A stretch of 64,000 nucleotides of DNA. Origin: Octopus sinensis (lineage: Eukaryota). Positions within the stretch are counted from its first letter, which is position 1; the number at the start of each line of letters is the position of its first letter. The stretch spans positions 54,064,001 to 54,128,000 of the forward strand of contig NC_043010.1 of NCBI RefSeq assembly GCF_006345805.1, read 5' to 3'. Below are positions 491 to 62,718 of this stretch, piece by piece. The notes under the pieces are model-generated. The model worked only from the letters and a program-made list of their open reading frames with translations, did not search any database and was not told the origin of the DNA. The translations under genes and the position numbers were made by a program.

Positions 491-680
491 ATTGGTTAGA
501 TATCCAACTAAATAACCACATGGTTCCGGGTTCAGTCTCGCTGCGTGGCACCTTGAGCAAGTGTCTTCTACTATAGCCTCGGGCTGATCAAAGCTTTGTG
601 AGTGGATTTGGTAGACGGAAACTGAACGAAGCCCGGCGTGTATATGTATACAGATATATGTATGTGTGTGTGTGTGTGTA
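491..680 (+). mobile_element. SINE family A, 5' half
   Basis: AACCACATGGTTCCGGGTTCAGTC..GCGTGGCACCTTGAGCAAGTGTCTTCTACTATAGCCTCGGG..GGTAGACGGAAACTGAA matches the full copies at 8584, 30109, 46290. Confidence 0.85.
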
Positions 681-8495: not shown

Positions 8496-8583
8496 AATGG
8501 ATTCACACTTAAATATACGTGTGTTTGTTCGTGAGTGTGAGCGTGTGTATACATGCATGTTATGTATGTTTGTATGAATATAT

Positions 8584-8983
8584 AGGCGCAGGAGTGGCTG
8601 TGTGGTAAGTAGCTTGTTTACCAACCACATAGTTCCGGGTTCAGTCCCACTGCGTGGCACCTAGGGCAAGTGTCTTCTACTATAGCCTCGGGCTGACCAA
8701 AGCCTTGTGAGTGGATTTGGTAGACGGAAACTGAAAGAAGCCAGTCGTATATATGTATATATATATGTATGCGCGTGTATGTTCGTGTGTCTGTGTTTGT
8801 CCCCCTAGCATTGCTTGACAACCGATGCAGGTGTGTTTACGTCCCCGTAACTTAGCGGTTCGGCAAAAGAGACCGATAGAATCAGTACTGGGCTTACGAA
8901 GAATAAGTCCCGGGGTCGATTTGCTCGACTAAAGGCGGTGCTCCGGCATGGCCGCAGTCAAATGACTGAAACAAGTAAAAGAG
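8584..8983 (+). mobile_element. SINE family A, full length
   Basis: GGCGCAGGAGTGGCTGTGTGGTAAG head, internal (TA)/(TG) tract, GTTTACGTCCCCGTAACTTAGCGGTTCGGC domain, tail GGCGGTGCTCCGGCATGGCCGCAGTCAAATGACTGAAACAAGTAAAAGAG. Confidence 0.9.
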
Positions 8984-14679: not shown

Positions 14680-15026
14680 CATCAAGGGGGCAATTTAAAT
14701 GGCCAGTGATCCCGTTGCCAGCTCATGAAATTAACGTGCAAGTAGCTGAGCACTCCACAGACACGTGTATCCTTAACGTAGTTCTCGGTGAGATTCACCG
14801 TGACACAGTGTGACAAGACTGACCCTTTGAAATACAGGTACCAGAGAAATAGGAAGACAGAGTGAGAGAAAGTTGTGGTGAACGAGTACAGCCGGGTTCG
14901 CCACCACCACCTGCCGGAGCCTCTTGGAGCTTTAGGTGTTTTCGCTGAATAAACACTCTCAACGCCTGGTCTGGGTATCAAAACCGCGAGCCCGCCGCCC
15001 TAACCACTGGGCTATTGCACCTCCAC
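14680..15026 (-). mobile_element. tRNA-derived SINE, family C (GTGAAATTAACGTG-type tail)
   Basis: minus head GTGGAGGTGCAATAGCCCAGTGGTTAGGG..; body AGAGTGAGAGAAAGTTGTGG; homologous to 41471-41857. Confidence 0.85.
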
Positions 15027-15034
15027 TCTTTTAA

Positions 15035-16355
15035 AATGATACAGGTGTTTATATCCTTCTACAATTTGAATAGTTTTAATGCGTACTTAATTCAAATTAT
15101 TAAAAATTGTCGGCCAAATATGTTTGAGACCGTACCGACATTATTTTGTTTAATTTCATAATTCACGACACAAACAATCAATGAGCAAAAATTTATTATT
15201 AGTATCAAGTTCCATTATTTTCAATTACAGCCTTACAACTGCCGATATGGAGTTCGACGATGGGCACAAAAATTATTTGGAATATTCTGTAATAGTTCTT
15301 CAATAAAATTATATAATTGGGACAATTTGTTTTTAACATGGACTCTTTTAGAAAAATAATTCTATAAATTTTCTATCAGATTCAAATAACCACCATATTA
15401 TTGCACTCAAAATATTGCAAAATTTTTCCGGTGACATCTGATTATTTAAAAATAGCAGCACATTTTCGTTTACTAATTGCAGATAGCCTACACCGTTCTG
15501 TCTGCCATCAACATCAACAATAGAACCAACACCTAAGCTGCTAAACGTGGCCCACACCATGACCCCACCACCTCCCACTTGCGCCGTTTTGTTGATACAC
15601 TTAGGATGAACTACTTCAGTTGGATGGCGTATAAAATAAGTCTTTCCTTCTGATCCAAAGATGCAGAAGTGAGATTCGTCGCTCCAAAGATCTTTTGACG
15701 AGTGTTCGGCCATCCATTTAATATGGCTTTTAGCAAACTTGATCCACTTCCCTCGGTTCGTCTCAGGAATTATCTGCTTCTTTCGAGCGATCCGGTCGAA
15801 GAACTCGAATTCTTTTTGGCGGTTTCTGACAGTTTGTGATGTAAAGCTGATGTCAGTTTTATGAGTTAATTGCTTGCAAATGTCCACTGCTGTTAGCATT
15901 CTTTTACCTCCAGGGAGCCTATGAATTCGCCGATCCATCTGTACTTTTCTTTTTTTTTCTCGGAGCTCCCGTTCTTTGCCGATATTTTTATTGGTCAGCG
16001 GCTTGGTTAAGTTTCCATGCTTGAACACAAATCTGTTTTGCTGCATCCTAATTGCTTGATAATATTTAGGAAAGACACAGTTTGCTGATGAGGCAACACA
16101 AGCTTTGATGTAGTAAATTTCTCATAGCGAATTAATGTCTCACAATGATTGATCATTAAAGAAAACAGTGCAGTACGACCAGCCACATGACCACACATTT
16201 GGTTTATTAATTTGCATAATCTTGGTACGGTCTTCAATTTATTTTGCCGACAGTTTCTAATCATTTGAATTAATTGTGCATTAAAATAATTCGAATTGAA
16301 GAAAGATATATAACACCTGTGTCATTCGAAAGGGAAAAAAAGTCTACATAAACTG
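15035..16355 (-). mobile_element. Tc1-like transposon with ~100-bp inverted repeats
   Basis: IR 15035-15136 vs 16224-16326 (AATGA(T/C)ACAGGTG..TGTCGG..GACCGTACC); possible outer end ACTG|TA at 16352-16357. Confidence 0.9.
15207..16190 (-). pseudogene. Tc1 DDE transposase pseudogene (includes ORF 15348-16046)
   Basis: motifs RIARKK, WSDESHF (first Asp), GGGGVMVWATFS, then out-of-frame LNLIENL*, QNIP, CKAVIENNG; the FQQDNAP and WPAQSPD segments are deleted. Confidence 0.9.
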
Positions 16356-27760: not shown

Positions 27761-27855
27761 TCACATGATAGAATGCCTCGTCGAAGACAGCGTATGGATG
27801 TTCGGGATTTTTTGACCGACCTGCAGAAATTTATTTTTTAAGATTATTTATACAT

Positions 27856-28250
27856 AGATACAGGAGTAGCCGTGTGGTAAATAGTTTACTTAAGAACCAC
27901 ATGATTCTGGGTTCAGTCCCACAGCGTGGCACCTTGGGCAAGTATCTTCTACTATAGCCTCGGGCCGACCAAAACCTTGTGAGTGGATTTGGTAGACGGA
28001 AACTGAAAGAAGCCAGTCGTATATATATATATATATATATATAAGCCTTTGTGTTTGTGTTTGTCCCCACACCATCGCTTGACACCGATTGTGGTGTGTT
28101 TACGTCCGTGTAACTTAACGATTAGGCAAAAGAACCCGATAGAATAAGTACTAGGGTTACAAAGAATAAATTTTGGGGCCGATTCGTTCGACTAAAGGCG
28201 TTGCCCCAGCATGGCCGCAGTCAAATGACTGAAAAAAATAAAATAAAAGA
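27856..28250 (+). mobile_element. SINE family A, full length
   Basis: homology to 8584-8983. Confidence 0.9.
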
Positions 28251-30026: not shown

Positions 30027-30108
<82 letters not shown>

Positions 30109-30109
<1 letters not shown>

Positions 30110-30492
30110 GGCGCAGGAGTGGCTGTGTGGTATGTAGCTTGTTTACCAACCACATGCTTCCGGGTTCAATCACACTGCGTGGCATCTTGGCAAGTGTCTT
30201 CTACTATAGCATCGGGCCAACCAAAGCCTTGTGAGTGGATTTGGTAGACGGAAACTGAAAGAAGCCCGTCGTATATATGTATATATATATATATGTGTGT
30301 GTATGTTTGTGTGTCTGTGTTTGTCCCCCTAGCATTGCTTGACAACCGATGCTAGTGTGTTCGCCAAAAGAAACCGATAGAATAAGTACTGGGCTTACAG
30401 GGAGTAAGTCCTGGGAACGATTTGCTCGACTAAAGGCGGTGCTCCAGCATGGCCTCGGTCAAATGACTGAAACAAGTAAAAGAGTAAAAGAG
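30109..30492 (+). mobile_element. SINE family A, near full length
   Basis: homology to 8584-8983, with a small internal deletion. Confidence 0.9.
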
Positions 30493-33580: not shown

Positions 33581-35362
33581 GACAGGTAATTCATTGAAAA
33601 AAAATATGTACCCTCTACGCATATACCTGAGTGTGTAAATAAGAAGATCGAATTTCCAAATATGTGGTTTCGGTTGCAGTTCCTCTATTGCTTGACACTT
33701 TGGGCAGGTGTCTTCTACTTAGAATACCTTGTCAGTAAATTCTTTGGATTGAAACTTTGTGGAAACCCGCATTATACATACATGTGCATACATACACACA
33801 TACATAGATAAATTATAAGTTCATATTTATACCTGTAATTATTGGTGCCTTGGGATATGTAACACACTACTTAAATGCCAATCTCGAGTATTTAGGCTTC
33901 GCAAAACTATAAAAGGAGAAAGCTAATTCAAAAACTGCAGATCCAATCCATGACTGGAACTGTAGAAAAATCTGTAAACCTTTCCAGAAGTTTCTCATTT
34001 GAATATATATGAGCATGTCTAGATATGCAGCTATACGCATACATAATACATACATACATAATACTTACATACATGCATACACACATATATTAATACATAC
34101 ATACAAACAAAAATACCCTGTTGTTGATGTTGAAATTCCAAAGAAGGAGACTTGGATCTAGGTTAGAAACTGGTTCTTTCTCTATTGGCAAGGCATCTTG
34201 AAATAAACTGGATGATGGCATACATACATAAAAACATATATAGATATAAACATATATACATACATTTTGCTTTGAAAATCAAAGAGAAAGAAGATAACTG
34301 TGGATAACCGCTTCGAAACCTCTAGCTTCTATATCCGTATTACAAATTTAGAATCATACCAATAATAATTGGAGCGCATGGTTTTCTAAGACAATGTCAT
34401 TCTGGATAAGCTTGGATTATCAGAGAAAGAAATCACCCAATTGATTCGCATATGAAATATACAATCCCTAAGTGGAACAATAAAACGATGCAAGATTTTT
34501 CTCGGGCGAAAATGTGACATTGTCTTATTATCTTGATTAGAAACCGGCCAATTCAAAGGAATAATTTATATGATTAAATACAGAAGATTAATACACATAC
34601 GTCCATGCATAGATGTATCTCTATATAACCATTTATAACTAAGTTTACGTGTGTGTGTGTGTGCGTCTGCGTGTTCACTTGTGTGCGTATGTGTATGTGT
34701 ATGTGTCTGTGTGTGTGCCTGCGTGTTCATTTGTATGTGTTTATGCGTTCGCGTAAATACTTGAATCTTACATGTGTAATCCACAGTGTACTCCATAATT
34801 AATCTTGCAGAGTTAATATCCAATACTAATGCCAAACTGTTACCCCAAACATAATAAATTACACGCTTGTCTAAAACAAGTTCAGTGAGTGAATCAAAGG
34901 ATAGGAACGTTAAGATCTAAAGAATGACATAAACGAAACGGGCACGAAGAGTAATTCACTTCATGAAATGCTCGCACTCTGTGTGTAACTCATGCACACT
35001 TGCAGAAGCACACAGATACATACATGCATTCATACATATACATAAATATATATATATATATATGTATATATATAATATATATATCTATATACACACATAC
35101 ATAATATATATATATATATATATATATTATTATATATATATATAATATATATATATATGTATATATATACATATGTATATATTTATAATAATATACGTAT
35201 ATATATATATTAATTTATATATAGAGGGCATTATACATACATGCCAGAAGGCATTATACATACATGCCACACGCTAAGAGGGACAATTAGTCATTTCTAC
35301 CAAAAAATATTACTAATCCCACCGAATGCAATTTTTCAAAGTAAGACATTTAAAAAATATAT

Positions 35363-35410
35363 AGACCTGTATCACAATGATTTCATACTTACGTATTCAT
35401 CAGAAGGCCT
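35363..35410 (-). ncRNA. type I hammerhead ribozyme, 3' copy (U2.1-C1.1 mismatch)
   Basis: minus strand AGGCCUU-CUGAUGA-AUAC[GUAA]GUAU-GAA-AUCA[UUG]UGAU-A^CAGGUCU; predicted cleavage between 35370 and 35369. Confidence 0.8.
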
Positions 35411-35839
35411 GAATGTATTATAAATAAACAACGACCCTGCCCCGCTTAAGCCGATCAGCTAACTGATCAACATCAACGAAGCACATGGGTGAGTTTACAT
35501 ATATTACATCCGGATAAATGGCAAACTTTTACGAATTGCATTTCGGGAGAGGAAAAGTTTCGGAATAAAAATTTAGCAATTAAGGACAACTACTTAATAA
35601 GGAAAACTTAACAAGAAATTGTCAGGTAGATAGCGTGAACCTCATAAGAGAAAAAATTTCGAAAATAATTATTTCTTATTGAACATATTAATTTTATATA
35701 GAGGGCATTATACATACATGCCAGAAGGCATTATACATACATGCCACACGCTAAGAGGGACAATTAGTCATTTCTACCAAAAAATATTACTAATCCCACC
35801 GAATGCAATTTTTCAAAGTAAGACATTTAAAAAATATAT

Positions 35840-35887
35840 AGACCTGTATCACAGTGATTTCATACTTACGTATTCATCAGCAGGCCT
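35840..35887 (-). ncRNA. type I hammerhead ribozyme, 5' copy (fully paired)
   Basis: minus strand AGGCCUG-CUGAUGA-AUAC[GUAA]GUAU-GAA-AUCA[CUG]UGAU-A^CAGGUCU; 7-bp stem I, 4-bp stem II with GNRA loop, 4-bp stem III, AUA triplet; cleavage between 35847 and 35846. Confidence 0.88.
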
Positions 35888-36643
35888 GAATGTATTATAA
35901 ATAAACAACGTCCCTGCCCCGCTTAAGCCGATATATATATATATGTATATATATATATATTTATATGTATATATATATACATGTATGTATATATATATAT
36001 GTATATATTTATGTATATATGTATATATGTATATATATATATATGTATATATGTATATATATATATGTATATATAAATATATATGTATATTTATATGTAT
36101 ATAGAAATATATACGTATATATATATATATGTATATAGAAATATATATGTATATATAAATATATATATACTTATATATATATACCTATACACGTACATGT
36201 GTGTGTATGAATACCTCTATACAATACGAATAGTCACATGCATACATTACACATGGAGTATATTTATATACGTACCATATAAATATATATATCTATATAA
36301 ATATATATATATATATATATATGTACATATGATATAGATGAACGTAAAACTCACACAACAAAGAGAGAGAGAGGAGAGCGGTAACCATAACAAGAGAGAG
36401 AGAGAGAGAGACGAGCAGAGAAATAGTAAAGAGTGAAAAATCTACCTTCCTTCGTTGATCGTAAGTGCACAGAGGAATTAAATGCAAATCTATTATTTTG
36501 CTTGGATCCATCAAAGAACAATACTTGCTAATGAAGGCTTTCAACGATGCTTATATTTTCCAATTTGTATTTATCTCTTAAATCATGTTTACTTCGAACA
36601 CTCAGTGGATTCACCAACATATATATATAATATATATATATAT

Positions 36644-38277: not shown

Positions 38278-38364
38278 CTAGTAAAAATAAAAAAAAGATG
38301 TAATATATCTCTTCGAAAGCATGGGTTCGAATCACTCCGCTGTCATGAGGAATATTTTATCAGG

Positions 38365-38772
38365 TGCAGACATGGCTGTATGGTAAGAACCTTGTGTTCG
38401 AAATGACATGATTCCTAGATCACTCCTTCTGAAGTGTCACCTCGGGCAAGCGCTTTCTACTATAACCTCGATCCGACCAATTGCTTGTGAGTGGATTTGG
38501 TGGTCGAAAACTAAAACAATCACATCATATACATAGAGACCGGTCGTGTATACATGGCTGTGGGTGTCGTTCAGTCTGTGTTTGCACTCCACCATCAATT
38601 GACGACAGGTATTGGCGTGTCAAGTCCTTGTAACTTAGCGACTCAGCAAAAGAGGCGATAAAATAGGTACTAAGCTTTTCTAAAATGTACTGGTGTCGAT
38701 TCATTGAACTAAAAATTCTTCAAGGCGTTGTCCCAACAAGGCCACACTTTAATGTAATGACTGAAACAAGAT
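38365..38772 (+). mobile_element. SINE family A, old and diverged
   Basis: ATGGCTGTATGGTAAG head, GTGAGTGGATTTGGT, GTAACTTAGCG, TGACTGAAACAAG tail. Confidence 0.75.
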
Positions 38773-41470: not shown

Positions 41471-41857
41471 GGAATGGAAGCACTCCGTCGGTTACGACGA
41501 TGAGGGTTCCGATTGATCCGATCAACGGAACAGCCTGCACGTGAAATTAACGTGTAAGTGGCTGAGCATTCCACAGACACGTGTACCCTTAACGTAGTTC
41601 TCGGGGATATTCAGCGTGACACAGAGAGTGACAAGGCCGGCCCTTTGAAATACAGGTACAACAGAAACAGGAAGTAAGAGTGAGAGAAAGTTGTGGTGAA
41701 AGAGTACAGCAGGGATCACCACCATCCCTGCCGGAGCCTCGTGGAGCTTTAGGTGTTTTCGCTCAATAAACACTCACAACGCCCGGTCTGGGAATCGAAA
41801 TCGCGATCCTACGACCGTGAGACCGCTGCCCTAACCACAGGGCGAATGTGCCGCCAC
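41471..41857 (-). mobile_element. SINE family C, full length
   Basis: homology to 14680-15026; GGAACAGCCTGCACGTGAAATTAACGTG..CCACAGACACGTGTACCC on plus. Confidence 0.9.
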
Positions 41858-42187: not shown

Positions 42188-42525
42188 AAGACACTTGGGC
42201 AAGTGTCTTCTACTATAGCCTCGGGCCGACCAAAGCGTTGTGAGTGGATTTGGTAGACGGAAACTGTAAGAAGCCCGTCGTATATATATATATATGAATA
42301 TATATATGTGTGTCTGTGTTTGTCCCCCGAACATCGCTTGACAACCGATGCAGGTGTGTTTACGTCCCCGTAACCTCGTGGTGCGGCAAAAGAGACCCAT
42401 AGAATACGTACTAGGCTAACAAAGAATAAGTGCTGGGGGTCAATTTGTGCGACTAAAGGCGGTACTCCAGCATGGCTCCATTCAAATGACTGAAACAAGT
42501 AGAAGAATAAAAGAATAAAAGAGTG
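42188..42525 (+). mobile_element. SINE family A, 5'-truncated
   Basis: starts at CTTGGGCAAGTGTCTTCTACTATAGCC after an (AAT)n tract; canonical tail. Confidence 0.85.
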
Positions 42526-43204: not shown

Positions 43205-43805
43205 GTTTATTTTTTATTTCATTAGTTTCAGCACACGAGCTCTGGCCATGCTGGGGCACCGCCATTTGTTGTTGCTATATAATTTTACTTCACGAATGCT
43301 TTTTAGCAATTGACTTTTGGTGCATGAGAGATTTTGATGCAGCTGCCCTCATCGGCACCTGCTGTGAAGTTGGTTCATCTGGACACCTGACAGGAAGACG
43401 TCTAGCTTTATTTTGAAGACACCTACATCTACCCCATGCAGGTCTCTCAGGTCCTTCGGGAGGAAATTAAAGAGCTGTGGACCTCTGAATCCCAGCCTAT
43501 TGCAGTATCTTGTCCTACATTTTGATATTAAATTTGGAGTCCTTGGCACTATGCAATGGCACCCAGTTCTAGTATTTGTGTAACTCTCAATGCCAAAGTT
43601 TGGGACAAGTCCTACCAGGATCTTCCAGATGTATATTATGGCATATCTTTCTCGCTTACGCTCTAAGGAATAGAGTCTTAATCTCTTGAGTCTTTCCCAA
43701 TAGCTTATATGCTGCATAGAGGCTATCTTCTTCGTGTAGCTTCGTTGGATTGCCTCAAGTTCTGAGATTAATTTGACTCTGGTTAGTGGCCATAGCTGAG
43801 AGCTA
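43205..43805 (-). mobile_element. CR1-group LINE 3' fragment (RT C-terminus plus 3' UTR)
   Basis: QLWPLTRVKLISELEAIQRSYTKKI..SYWERLKRLRLYSLERKRERYAIIYIWKIL..GPQLFNFLPKDLR..FKIKLDVFL; 3' end GGCGGTGCCCCAGCATGGCC..GCTGAAAC. Confidence 0.92.
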
Positions 43806-44132
43806 TGATAAAAAAATCAGACAACCAGTTACGCCTTTGATTTTAAGGCTCGCCTACGTAATACACAAGGCATTTTTAGTATAGGCATTATGCTAAAATA
43901 TCTGCATTTCAGCAAATGATTCATGCTGCATCGAGCACACAATTCTTGACTTTACATCTCAATGCACATGGAAAACTAAATGGATCATTATTTCACATAT
44001 GTAGCACAATCTTTACACGTAAGTTCTAAGGCAGATTTATTTCGTTTAATACATCGATTATTAAATACATGTTTATACGTAAGCAATTTTGTACCTAGGC
44101 AGAATCACTTTTATATACGCAAACTTGGCATA

Positions 44133-46289: not shown

Positions 46290-46687
46290 GGAGGGTAATG
46301 GCTGTGTGGTAAGTAGCTTGCTTATGAACCACGTGGTTCCAGGTTTAGTCCCACTGCGTGGCACCTGGGGCAAGTGTCGTCTACTATAGCCTCAGGCCGA
46401 CCAACGCCTTGTGTGTGGATTTGGTAGACGGAAACGGATAGAAGCCCGTCGTATATATATATATGTATGTGTATATGTATATATGTGTGTGTGCTTGTGT
46501 TTGTCCCGCCAACATCTCTTGACAACCGATGCTGGTGAGTTTACGTCCCCGTAACTTAGCGGTTCGGCAAAAGAAACCGATAGAATAAGTACTAGGCTTA
46601 CAAAGAATAAGTCCTGGGGTCGATTTGCTCGACTAAAGGCAGTGCTCCAGCATGGCCATAGCCAAATAACTGAAACAAGTAAAAGAG
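46290..46687 (+). mobile_element. SINE family A, full length
   Basis: homology to 8584-8983. Confidence 0.9.
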
Positions 46688-54582: not shown

Positions 54583-54783
54583 CACTTTTACTCTTTTACT
54601 TGTTTCAGTCATTTGACTGTGGCCATGCTGGTGCAGTGCCTTTAGTCGAGCAAATCGACCCCAGGACTTATTCTTTGTAAGCCTAGGACTATTCTATCGG
54701 TCTCTTTTGCCAGCATCGTTTATCAAGCGATGTTGGGGGGACAAACACAGACACACAAACATACACACACACACACACACATG

Positions 54784-54823
<40 letters not shown>

Positions 54824-54970
54824 TACGTCGGGATTTTTTCAGTTTCCCTGTAGCAAATCCACTCACGAGGGTATAGTAGAAGACACTTGCTCAAGGTGCC
54901 ATGCAGAGGGACTGAGTACGGCACCATGTGGTTCGTAAGCAAGCTACTTACCACACAGCCCCATCTACGG

Positions 54971-54972
<2 letters not shown>
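54583..54972 (-). mobile_element. SINE family A with internal deletions
   Basis: reverse tail TTACTTGTTTCAGTCATTTGACTGTGGCCATGCTGG and head GTAGAAGACACTTGCTCAAGGTGCCATGCAG..CTTACCACACAGCC. Confidence 0.85.
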
Positions 54973-55006
<34 letters not shown>

Positions 55007-62151: not shown

Positions 62152-62718
62152 TTGGATCGTTCGGAAAGTTCGTGCCAATTCATAGTAGCTCATGTTTCGA
62201 CTTATTTTAGAACCTGGTTAAGTCCATAAAATAGGATTTGACTACACCTCCATTTAGAGCACAGTTTAAGCTATCTTTTCGTGGAAGAAGGCATATGTTC
62301 CTATAACCTATGTTAATTCTGTAACCCTTTAAAATGGAAGAGAAGAAAGTTCATCTTGGGCACTTGATGCTTTGGGAACCAGACAAAAATTGCTGCAGCT
62401 CGGCTGGGATGTGTTACACCACCCTCCATATTCGCCAGATATTGCTCCTTCAGATTTCCACTTATTCAGGTCTTAGCAGAATAGTTTTAATGGTAAAAAA
62501 TTCAATTCCTTGGATGACGTAAAAATATACCTTGATGAATTCTTTGCTATGAAACCACATCAATTCTGGGAAGAGAGAATACTCAAGTTAAAGGAAAGAT
62601 GGAGACGCTTTGTGCCACAAAATGGTTCATATTTGGTTGATTAAAAATGTAATGGCAAGTATTTATTGACCTTTTACTTTCTTTTCAAAAACGGCACGAA
62701 CTTTCTGGGCAAACCCAA
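62152..62718 (+). mobile_element. internally deleted mariner (D,D34D-type) element with TA TSD
   Basis: TIRs TA|TTGGATCGTTCGGAAAGTTCGTGCC and GGCACGAACTTTCTGGGCAAACCCAA|TA; MEEKKVHLGHLMLW fused to TRQKLLQLGWDVLHHPPYSPDIAPSDFHLFRS..RWRRFVPQNGSYLVD*. Confidence 0.92.

What the first reader, a model, noticed from the sequence alone, without database searches (positions are those of the whole stretch)
35363..35887. Two complete type I hammerhead ribozymes in tandem on the minus strand
Seen in sequence: both copies read stem I 5' strand - CUGAUGA - AUAC/GUAA/GUAU (4-bp stem II, GNRA loop) - GAAA - UCA/loop/UGA-U-A - stem I 3' strand (CAGGUCU pairing with AGGCCUG, 7 bp with one G-U). Established: this is the hammerhead core (C3-A9, G12-A14, A15.1-U16.1, NUH = AUA), and minimal type I hammerheads occur in tandem in animal retrozymes and Penelope-like elements. 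Inference: this is a self-cleaving RNA locus that may be unannotated in this lineage.
Basis: partly seen in the sequence, partly recalled or inferred. Interest (0 to 1): 0.92.

Follow-up and report, generated by a model that had tools for sequence, protein, structure and literature searches.

The report
Retrozyme-like tandem hammerhead ribozyme element
A small non-coding mobile-element insertion in an animal-type genome carries two copies of a self-cleaving hammerhead RNA motif 477 bases apart, the known layout that lets such elements release small circular RNAs; it looks like an ordinary though unannotated member of a known class.

Summary
Two 48-nt type I hammerhead motifs lie on the minus strand at 35887-35840 and 35410-35363. 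Each has the full conserved core, a 4-bp helix II with a GUAA loop, a 4-bp helix III, and cleavage triplet AUA. Helix I is 7 bp in copy 1 and 6 bp plus a U:C mismatch beside the core in copy 2.

They sit in two 248-nt direct repeats (98% identical) flanking a 229-nt unique segment. This A-B-A block of 726 nt is 1.5 units of a 477-nt repeat. It is non-coding, 33% GC, and embedded in a long impure (TA)n tract. Double cleavage would release a 477-nt RNA that folds much better than shuffles (z = -7.4), but only about 2 sd better than native sequence from the same window.

This matches animal non-LTR retrozymes, which are non-autonomous derivatives of Penelope-like elements.

Caveats:
- No Rfam hammerhead model scores it usefully.
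- The 10.1-11.1 pair is A-U, not the usual G-C.
- No relatives turned up in any searchable collection, so covariation is untested.
- Cleavage is untested, and the organism was not identified.

Verdict: a probable new member of a known kind, of modest interest.

The parts
35840..35887 (-). Hammerhead motif, copy 1 (type I). Helix I 7 bp (one G-U), core CUGAUGA / GAA, helix II AUAC-GUAA-GUAU, helix III AUCA-CUG-UGAU, H17 = A. Predicted cleavage between 35847 and 35846.
35363..35410 (-). Hammerhead motif, copy 2. Identical except U at 2.1 (a U:C mismatch at the innermost helix I pair) and loop 3 UUG. Predicted cleavage between 35370 and 35369.
35685..35932 (-). Direct repeat A (upstream copy on the minus strand, about 248 nt), pseudo-LTR-like, containing hammerhead copy 1.
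35456..35684 (-). Unique internal segment B (229 nt). No ORF with homologs, and no PBS or polypurine tract by reading. Contains a 28-nt arm (35515-35542) that is 79% complementary to 35802-35829 and 35325-35352 in the A repeats.
35207..35455 (-). Direct repeat A' (downstream copy), 98% identical to A, containing hammerhead copy 2.
35370..35846 (-). Predicted 477-nt RNA released by double self-cleavage (5' end at 35846, 3' end at 35370), the candidate circular RNA. Circular MFE is -128.8 kcal/mol with 67% of bases paired.
35030..35206 (.). Impure (TA)n tract abutting the element on its low-coordinate side.
35933..36200 (.). Impure (TA)n/(TACA)n tract abutting the element on its high-coordinate side. 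Together with 35030-35206 it reads as one microsatellite split by the insertion, so a target-site duplication cannot be read.

Best explanation
This is a single insertion of a non-autonomous, retrozyme-type retroelement: the animal 'non-LTR retrozyme' class, now regarded as derived from Penelope-like elements.

Its genomic form is a partial tandem, A-B-A, equal to 1.52 units of a 477-nt repeat. Each A repeat carries a compact type I hammerhead on the minus strand.

Proposed mechanism (all steps below are inferred from the literature, not shown here):
1. A minus-strand transcript crosses the locus.
2. Each hammerhead folds and cleaves after A17, at 35847|35846 and 35370|35369.
3. This releases a 477-nt linear RNA with a 5'-OH and a 2',3'-cyclic phosphate.
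4. A cellular RtcB-type tRNA ligase can close that RNA into a highly self-paired circular RNA.
5. The circle can serve as template for the reverse transcriptase and endonuclease of an autonomous Penelope-like element. That would make more-than-unit copies and insert them, apparently with a preference for (TA)n.

What is shown here: the motif, its significance against chance, the A-B-A architecture, the lack of coding capacity, the (TA)n context, and strand-specific excess folding.

The upstream hammerhead looks competent as a monomer because its helix III is stable (4 bp). The downstream one is probably weakened by the U2.1:C1.1 mismatch.
For: - Every invariant core position is present, three helices surround the core, and H17 = A.
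- The AUA triplet occurs in active natural hammerheads such as ELVd(+). That ribozyme shares the 7-bp helix I and the 4-bp helix II with a GNRA loop.
- The chance expectation is far below one for this window, and the control set of 92 core-only matches had no helices.
- Both motifs lie on the same strand inside 98% identical direct repeats spaced 477 nt apart.
- TRF reports a 477-nt period, and both hammerhead segments have an MFE below -5 kcal/mol. This meets the operational definition of an 'active retrozyme' in bioRxiv 10.64898/2026.07.22.740005.
- The 477-nt unit lies within that preprint's family range of 51-972 bp and just above the 150-450 bp quoted in PMC7229834. GC is 33%, against the <50% described there.
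- No LTR, PBS or PPT features are present, and no ORF has homologs.
- The circular monomer has an MFE of -128.8 kcal/mol against -88.5 +/- 5.5 for dinucleotide shuffles (z = -7.4). The opposite strand reaches only -92.0.
- That strand asymmetry falls in the top 3% of native windows, and the MFE in the top 5%.
- The partial-tandem 'pseudo-LTR' form and insertion into (TA)n are both described for Penelope-like elements.
Against: - Rfam 15 hammerhead models do not recognise either copy.
- The pair closing helix II is A10.1-U11.1. The literature calls G10.1-C11.1 highly conserved, although covariation at this pair is reported in cricket satellites.
- The nearest-neighbour MFE of each 48-mer is an alternative fold in which core UGAU pairs with AUCA. 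It is 2.4 kcal/mol (copy 1) and 3.3 kcal/mol (copy 2) better than the hammerhead fold.
- Against native, low-repeat sequence from the same window, the monomer's folding energy is only about 2 sd out: 13 of 266 folds are as low.
- Only one locus is visible and no homolog was found anywhere. There is therefore no covariation, no copy-number evidence and no expression evidence.
- No Penelope-like ORF was detected among the ORFs between 32.7 and 46.3 kb.
- (TA)n-rich tracts cover about 6% of this window, so the flank context is only suggestive.
Confidence: 0.62

Rival explanations
1. A genuine retrozyme or PLE-derived insertion that is now a dead relic. The hammerhead descends from an active one, but this locus no longer releases RNA. 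Possible causes are A10.1-U11.1, the U2.1:C1.1 mismatch in copy 2, the competing UGAU/AUCA fold, or a lack of transcription.
For: The copy 2 mismatch lies beside the cleavage site. The 10.1-11.1 pair is atypical. The MFE is not the hammerhead fold. There is no Rfam score. This is a single, isolated 1.5-unit locus with no other copy in 64 kb.
Against: The two repeats differ at only 4 positions in 248, which suggests a recent insertion. Copy 1 is intact. Natural hammerheads with a weak base of helix II (axolotl HHR_Amex2, a U:U mismatch) still cleave. In cricket satellites most potentially active hammerheads are also not the MFE structure.
Confidence: 0.22
2. A chance hammerhead-like string that happens to lie inside an ordinary local duplication or other repeat, with no ribozyme ancestry.
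For: The two copies are one independent event. With very liberal loop lengths a few such motifs are expected per Gb-sized genome, and the first stage may have read many windows. Rfam gives no support. No homologs were found.
Against: For compact geometries like the one observed, the expectation is 0.001-0.1 per Gb. The motif also sits in exactly the architecture known for retrozymes: same strand, period 477, non-coding, AT-rich. The hammerhead-polarity RNA is unusually structured while the other strand is not. None of 92 core-only matches elsewhere formed the helices.
Confidence: 0.1
3. A small LTR-type non-autonomous element (plant-style LTR retrozyme or TRIM-like), with A as true LTRs.
For: The A-B-A layout, with 248-nt direct repeats flanking a short internal region, looks superficially like the LTR retrozymes of plants (PMC4918200).
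Against: The hammerhead is type I, not type III. Read from the sequence, the repeats lack TG..CA termini. There is no tRNA-complementary primer binding site after the first repeat and no polypurine tract before the second. No short target-site duplication can be read in the (TA)n flanks. PMC7229834 states that animal elements lack these features.
Confidence: 0.04

Closest known systems
Animal non-LTR retrozymes (Cervera & de la Pena 2020, PMC7229834; Li, Clavereau & Pollet 2026 preprint 10.64898/2026.07.22.740005)
   Same: Type I hammerheads repeated on one strand of a short, non-coding, low-GC repeat. The unit length is within the reported range. The predicted product is a self-paired small RNA bounded by hammerhead cleavage sites. 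[quoted passage not shown]
   Different: Only 1.5 units at a single locus are visible here, not a multi-copy array. The 477-nt unit exceeds the ~170-400 nt circles described for invertebrates. Helix III is 4 bp, against the usual 1-2 bp. The 10.1-11.1 pair is A-U. Archetypal loop 1 - loop 2 contacts could not be recognised. Copy number, expression and circularity are unknown.
Penelope-like element pseudo-LTRs with hammerhead motifs (Cervera & de la Pena 2014, PMC4209133; Craig et al. 2021)
   Same: A partial-tandem 'pLTR - body - pLTR' layout with the hammerhead inside the repeat. Insertion into a (TA)n microsatellite, which is a reported PLE target.
   Different: There is no RT/GIY-YIG ORF; the body is 229 nt of non-coding sequence. 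PLE hammerheads are usually 'minimal', with no or a tiny palindromic helix III, a long helix II, an extra nucleotide before 10.1, and G10.1-C11.1. This one has none of those traits.
pDo500 satellite of Dolichopoda cave crickets (PMC2837043)
   Same: A repeat unit of about 463-505 bp carrying a 49-nt hammerhead. Hammerhead-mediated processing of multimeric transcripts. Covariation at 10.1-11.1 is tolerated.
   Different: The hammerhead sequence is unrelated. pDo500 is a high-copy satellite array, not an isolated A-B-A insertion.
Eggplant latent viroid (+) hammerhead (PMC1636495)
   Same: The same helix dimensions (helix I 7 bp, helix II 4 bp with a GNRA tetraloop) and the uncommon AUA cleavage triplet. 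This shows that such a design can be active.
   Different: The viroid ribozyme is type III, in an infectious circular RNA of plants, with loop 1 - loop 2 contacts and G-C-rich helices. There is no sequence relationship.

Membership tests
Hammerhead ribozyme, type I | Invariant core: C3 U4 G5 A6 N7 G8 A9, G12 A13 A14, A15.1-U16.1, H17 not G | tested here: met
   Both copies read CUGAUGA ... GAA A...U A.
Hammerhead ribozyme, type I | Three helices around the core, with helix I open and helices II and III capped | tested here: met
   Helix I is 7 bp (copy 1) or 6 bp plus a mismatch (copy 2). Helix II is 4 bp with a GUAA loop. Helix III is 4 bp with a 3-nt loop.
Hammerhead ribozyme, type I | G10.1-C11.1 pair at the base of helix II (highly conserved rather than absolute) | tested here: not met
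   The pair is A10.1-U11.1 in both copies. The literature calls the G-C pair highly conserved, with covariation seen in crickets.
Hammerhead ribozyme, type I | Score at or above the gathering threshold of an Rfam hammerhead covariance model (clan CL00010) | tested here: not met
   There was no hit at gathering. There was no Hammerhead_1 hit at E<=10 on 1.6 kb or on 76-nt slices. Hammerhead_3 scored 11.9 bits against a gathering score of 48.5 on copy 2 only.
Hammerhead ribozyme, type I | Tertiary contact between loop 1 (an internal loop in helix I) and loop 2 | tested here: inconclusive
   After the 7 bp of helix I come C:A and U:U mismatches followed by A-U pairs, and loop 2 is GNRA. The geometry is compatible, but the conserved contact nucleotides could not be checked.
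Hammerhead ribozyme, type I | Helices supported by compensatory changes among homologs | tested here: inconclusive
   Only two near-identical copies are available. No relative was found in the metagenome, viral, prokaryote-genome or protein collections.
Hammerhead ribozyme, type I | Site-specific Mg2+-dependent self-cleavage | not testable with these tools
   This needs in vitro transcription.
Animal non-LTR retrozyme | Tandem repeat of a few hundred bp with a type I hammerhead in at least two consecutive units on the same strand | tested here: met
   The period is 477 and there are two hammerheads on the minus strand. The criterion is described.
Animal non-LTR retrozyme | Non-coding, GC below 50%, no LTR/PBS/PPT hallmarks | tested here: met
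   GC is 0.33. The longest ORF, 88 aa on the opposite strand, has no homolog and no Pfam family. No PBS or PPT was seen by reading.
Animal non-LTR retrozyme | The monomer RNA adopts a stable, highly self-paired structure | tested here: inconclusive
   z = -7.4 against shuffles with 67% of bases paired, but only about 2 sd from native windows of the same genome.
Animal non-LTR retrozyme | Multi-copy family in the genome, expressed as linear and circular RNA, co-resident with autonomous PLEs | not testable with these tools
   Only one 64-kb window is available and it holds no other copy. No PLE domains were found among the ORFs between 32.7 and 46.3 kb.
Autonomous Penelope-like element | ORF encoding a reverse transcriptase plus a GIY-YIG endonuclease between the pseudo-LTRs | tested here: not met
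   The internal segment is 229 nt. No Pfam family was found and no protein homolog.
Plant-type LTR retrozyme | Type III hammerhead in LTRs, tRNA-Met PBS, PPT, 4-bp target-site duplication | tested here: not met
   The topology is type I. No PBS or PPT was seen by reading. The flanks are (TA)n, so no TSD can be read.

The most novel reading that the evidence does not exclude
This hammerhead represents a catalytically active, previously undescribed retrozyme family that covariance-model annotation cannot see. It would combine an A10.1-U11.1 base of helix II, an AUA cleavage triplet and a stable helix III that allows monomeric cleavage. It would propagate as minimal A-B-A units targeted to (TA)n microsatellites. 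That would tie retrozyme mobilisation to the (TA)n-targeting clades of Penelope-like elements, in a lineage where retrozymes have not been catalogued.
Probability: 0.3. Interest if true: 0.45.

Novelty: new member of a known kind. Interest (0 to 1): 0.33.

Why it matters
If it is active, the locus adds a retrozyme family in a very microsatellite-rich animal genome.

It also shows that standard Rfam-based annotation misses compact type I hammerheads of this design (A-U at 10.1-11.1, AUA site, 4-bp helix III).

The clean A-B-A insertion inside a (TA)n tract is a tidy example of the pseudo-LTR geometry that links animal retrozymes to Penelope-like elements. It would make a convenient small construct (726 nt) for testing circular RNA biogenesis.

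It does not open a new class of biology. Tandem type I hammerheads in invertebrate repeats, their circular RNAs and their PLE connection are all already described.

Tried and rejected
- **Rfam:** searched at gathering on the whole window and at E<=10 on 1.6 kb and on two 76-nt slices. No useful hammerhead hit. The many mir-297, mir-466 and similar hits are TA/CA microsatellite artefacts.
- **Exact and degenerate DNA pattern scans:** run against metagenome, viral and prokaryote-genome collections. No relative found. The 92 degenerate-pattern hits lacked the helices and served only as a negative control.
- **Protein-space route to other copies:** tried the 88-aa antisense ORF over the element. 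No homolog.
- **Organism identification:**
  - The Tc1-like ORF has hits of at most 40% identity.
  - The LINE RT fragment has 66-73% hits only to unnamed ENA/Logan contigs and one record labelled E. coli.
  - The organism stays unidentified. The SSR census (AT > AAT > AC > AGAT > AAG) makes me guess a decapod crustacean or similar invertebrate. That is a guess from memory, not a result.
- **Literature search for the hammerhead string:** nothing found.
- **Dolichopoda pDo500:** considered because of its ~500-bp unit and 49-nt hammerhead. Rejected because the sequence is unrelated.
- **LTR-type reading:** rejected; no PBS, PPT or TG..CA termini.
- **Minimal PLE-type hammerheads elsewhere in the window:** none found.
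- **TRF's '2.4 copies, 35015-36177':** the 477-nt alignment extends into the AT-rich flanks at 66% matches. I treat that extension as a low-complexity artefact. The solid repeat is 35207-35932.
- **Folding z-score:** the shuffle-based z-score alone overstates the structure signal, so I added native-window controls.

Full report
**What is in the sequence**

Read 5' to 3' on the minus strand, positions 35887-35840 are AGGCCUG CUGAUGA AUAC-GUAA-GUAU GAA AUCA-CUG-UGAU A CAGGUCU. In standard hammerhead numbering this gives:
- helix I strand 2.7-2.1;
- core C3-A9;
- helix II, 4 bp (A10.1-U11.1 to C10.4-G11.4) closed by a GNRA loop;
- G12 A13 A14;
- helix III, 4 bp (A15.1-U16.1 to A15.4-U16.4) closed by a 3-nt loop;
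- H17 = A;
- helix I strand 1.1-1.7.

Helix I is 7 bp with one G-U. The 5' and 3' ends lie in helix I, so the topology is type I.

A second copy lies exactly 477 nt downstream (35410-35363). It differs at two positions: loop 3 reads UUG rather than CUG, and position 2.1 is U rather than G. The second change turns the innermost helix I pair into a U:C mismatch.

My descriptor scan of both strands of the window found these two sites and no others. A scan for minimal Penelope-type variants found nothing further. A covariance model built from the two copies also found nothing further: 79.3 and 77.4 bits for the two copies, against 17 bits for the next hit.

**Is it more than chance?**

A relaxed descriptor gives 0.02 hits per 64-kb window in Markov-1 random sequence. 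For the helix lengths actually observed, the analytic probability is 5e-13 per position. That corresponds to about 7e-8 to 2.5e-4 per window. For a 1-Gb genome it is about 0.001 to 0.1 if only compact loop geometries are allowed, and about 4 if every loop length up to 70 nt is allowed.

The two copies are duplicates and count once.

As an empirical control, 92 metagenome sequences share the primary-sequence core CUGAUGA-N10-16-GAAAUCA-N3-5-UGAUAC. None of them had both helix I and helix II.

The motif alone would be a rare accident, though not an impossible one at genome scale. The context has to carry part of the argument.

**Context**

The two motifs sit in direct repeats of about 248 nt: A at 35932-35685 and A' at 35455-35207 on the minus strand. 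The repeats are 98% identical, with three substitutions and one 1-nt indel. They flank a 229-nt unique segment B at 35684-35456. The 726-nt block is therefore 1.52 units of a 477-nt repeat.

- The block is 33% GC.
- There is no other copy in the window.
- It has no coding potential that I can support. The longest frame is 88 aa on the opposite strand, with no homolog among 5.8 billion proteins and no Pfam family.
- B does not begin with a tRNA-complementary site or end with a polypurine tract, and the repeats lack TG..CA ends (reading).
- On both sides the block abuts an impure (TA)n tract, at about 35030-35206 and 35933-36200. It reads as an insertion into one ~450-bp microsatellite, and no target-site duplication can be read.
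- TA-rich tracts cover roughly 6% of this very repeat-rich window, so this context is suggestive rather than significant.
- No protein domains were found among ORFs between 32.7 and 46.3 kb.

**RNA structure**

The RNA bounded by the two cleavage sites (35846 to 35370, 477 nt), folded as a circle, has an MFE of -128.8 kcal/mol with 67% of bases paired. Dinucleotide shuffles give -88.5 +/- 5.5, so z = -7.4, and none of 200 shuffles folds as well. The complementary strand reaches only -92.0. Part of the pairing is long-range, between A and B: 28-nt arms, 79% complementary.

Shuffles flatter this number, because the genome is full of self-complementary repeats. Among all native 477-nt windows, 27 of 262 folds are at least as stable. 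Among low-repeat windows, 13 of 266 are as stable; their mean is -95.2 with sd 17.1, and most of those 13 are GC-richer. A strand asymmetry this large is seen in 4 of 133 windows. I therefore rate the structure signal as real but moderate, at about 2 sd.

For the isolated 48-mers, the hammerhead fold costs -9.7 kcal/mol (copy 1) and -7.5 kcal/mol (copy 2). An alternative fold, in which core UGAU pairs with the 5' strand of helix III, reaches -12.1 and -10.8. This is not disqualifying. In the cricket satellite, most potentially active hammerheads are also not the MFE structure.

**Comparison with curated models**

Rfam 15 gives nothing at gathering thresholds for the whole window. Even at E<=10, on 1.6 kb and on 76-nt slices, there is no Hammerhead_1 hit. 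The only clan member reported is Hammerhead_3, at 11.9 bits (gathering score 48.5, E = 3.8), on copy 2 and in a poor alignment.

The likely reasons are features that depart from the seed alignments: A-U instead of G-C at 10.1-11.1, U-A at 15.2-16.2 with an AUA site instead of GUC, and AU-rich helices. This explanation is inferred; I could not inspect the models.

**What the literature says about such things**

- PMC7229834 describes type I hammerheads in short tandem repeats (150-450 bp) across metazoan phyla, including molluscs, crustaceans and insects. The repeats have low GC, no LTR/PBS/PPT and larger or absent target-site duplications. They are expressed as ~170-400 nt linear and circular RNAs that fold into highly self-paired structures and are circularised by RtcB-type ligase rather than by the ribozyme. 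The same paper shows that an axolotl hammerhead with a U:U mismatch at the base of helix II still cleaves.
- PMC4209133 gives the canonical metazoan design: helix I 6 bp, helix II 4 bp, helix III 1-2 bp. It places hammerheads in the pseudo-LTRs of Penelope-like elements and calls G10.1-C11.1 highly conserved.
- Craig et al. 2021 describe the partial-tandem pseudo-LTR layout and (TA)n as a preferred PLE target.
- A 2026 preprint argues that animal retrozymes are non-autonomous PLE derivatives. It reports family consensus lengths of 51-972 bp and mostly seven or fewer units. It defines an active retrozyme as a tandem repeat with at least two consecutive complete hammerheads of MFE below -5 kcal/mol. 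The present locus meets that definition.
- PMC1636495 shows that AUA is a natural, active but sub-optimal cleavage triplet. It also shows that the ELVd(+) hammerhead has the same dimensions as this one (helix I 7 bp, helix II 4 bp with a GNRA loop).

**Most likely mechanism**

A minus-strand transcript across the locus folds two hammerheads. Because helix III is a stable 4-bp stem, each can act as a monomer, unlike the dimer-dependent newt, axolotl and PLE motifs. Cleavage after A17 at both sites releases a 477-nt RNA with 5'-OH and 2',3'-cyclic phosphate ends. A tRNA ligase circularises it. The circle would carry the copy 2 version of the ribozyme, whose mismatch should disfavour re-cleavage. 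A Penelope-like reverse transcriptase and endonuclease acting in trans copies it into more-than-unit cDNA and inserts it, here into (TA)n, which would produce the A-B-A form.

The anatomy and statistics are shown here. Every biochemical step is inferred from the cited work on related elements. I put about 0.6 on this reading, about 0.2 on the same origin but a now-inactive locus, about 0.1 on a chance motif in an unrelated duplication, and a few percent on an LTR-type element.

**Membership versus resemblance**

The locus meets the defining sequence and structure features of a type I hammerhead, except for two: the conserved (not absolute) G10.1-C11.1 pair and recognition by the curated covariance models. 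It meets the architectural definition of an animal non-LTR retrozyme.

It fails the definition of an autonomous PLE because it has no ORF. It fails that of a plant LTR retrozyme because the hammerhead is type I and there is no PBS or PPT.

Covariation, copy number, expression, circularity and cleavage could not be tested here. I therefore file it as a probable new member of a known kind.

**Limits**

No relative of the element was found in the JGI metagenome, IMG/VR or GTDB genome collections, or in protein space. Those collections are mostly not animal genomes.

The organism was not identified:
- The Tc1-like ORF has hits of at most 40% identity.
- A LINE fragment has 66-73% hits to unnamed contigs.
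- The window is clearly a repeat-rich animal-type genome: 33% GC, about 9% perfect microsatellite, and a ~400-bp interspersed repeat in ten or more copies.

**Score**

However, tandem type I hammerheads in invertebrate repeats are well described, so interest is modest (0.33).

Noticed in passing
window 514-675, 8578-8983, 27850-28243, 30103-30484, 38362-38677, 42194-42506, 46299-46687, 54591-54995 and others: An interspersed repeat of about 400 bp, present in ten or more copies at 70-89% identity, usually with an internal (TA)n/(CA)n microsatellite. It looks like a SINE or MITE family that seeds microsatellites. No tRNA or Rfam match was found.
   Followed up: partly
window 15351-16121 (-): A Tc1/mariner-type transposase remnant of 257 aa (stop to stop), matching Pfam HTH_Tnp_Tc3_2. 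The best database relatives are only 30-40% identical and include a rotifer protein, so the host genome seems poorly represented in public protein sets.
   Followed up: partly
window 43352-43816 (-): The C-terminal fragment of a non-LTR (LINE-like) retrotransposon ORF. It is 66-73% identical to ORFs on short unnamed ENA and Logan contigs, and to a partial protein filed under Escherichia coli. That last record is probably eukaryotic contamination of the assembly.
   Followed up: partly
whole window: The microsatellite load is extreme. About 9% of bases lie in perfect SSRs, ordered AT > AAT > AC > AGAT > AAG > AG, and there are 61 TA-rich tracts. No telomere-type repeats were found. These tracts produce many spurious sub-threshold Rfam hits (mir-297, mir-466, mir-1277, mir-3149, a pestivirus 3' UTR model).
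   Followed up: partly
window 35223-35269 and 35700-35746: Inside each A repeat there is a 23-nt unit (minus strand GGCAUGUAUGUAUAAUGCC plus a UUCU spacer) present twice in tandem at 95% identity. Each unit is a perfect small hairpin, so the retrozyme RNA carries twin hairpins. Their function is unknown.
   Followed up: no
window 35370-35846: The unit length of 477 nt is exactly 159 codons. The strand opposite the hammerhead has an 88-aa open frame (35634-35897) that spans the cleavage site. It has no homolog and no Pfam family, so it is probably meaningless.
   Followed up: yes
window 14685-14999 (-) and 41525-41773 (-): Two distant segments share a translated stretch (…NLTENYVKDTRVCGVLSYLHVNF… and …NIPENYVKGTRVCGMLSHLHVNF…). 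This suggests another dispersed repeat family. Neither segment has a Pfam match.
   Followed up: no
window 62325-62641 (+): Two short overlapping frames resemble, from memory, the C-terminal end of a mariner-type transposase. Pfam gave no match, so this is unverified.
   Followed up: partly
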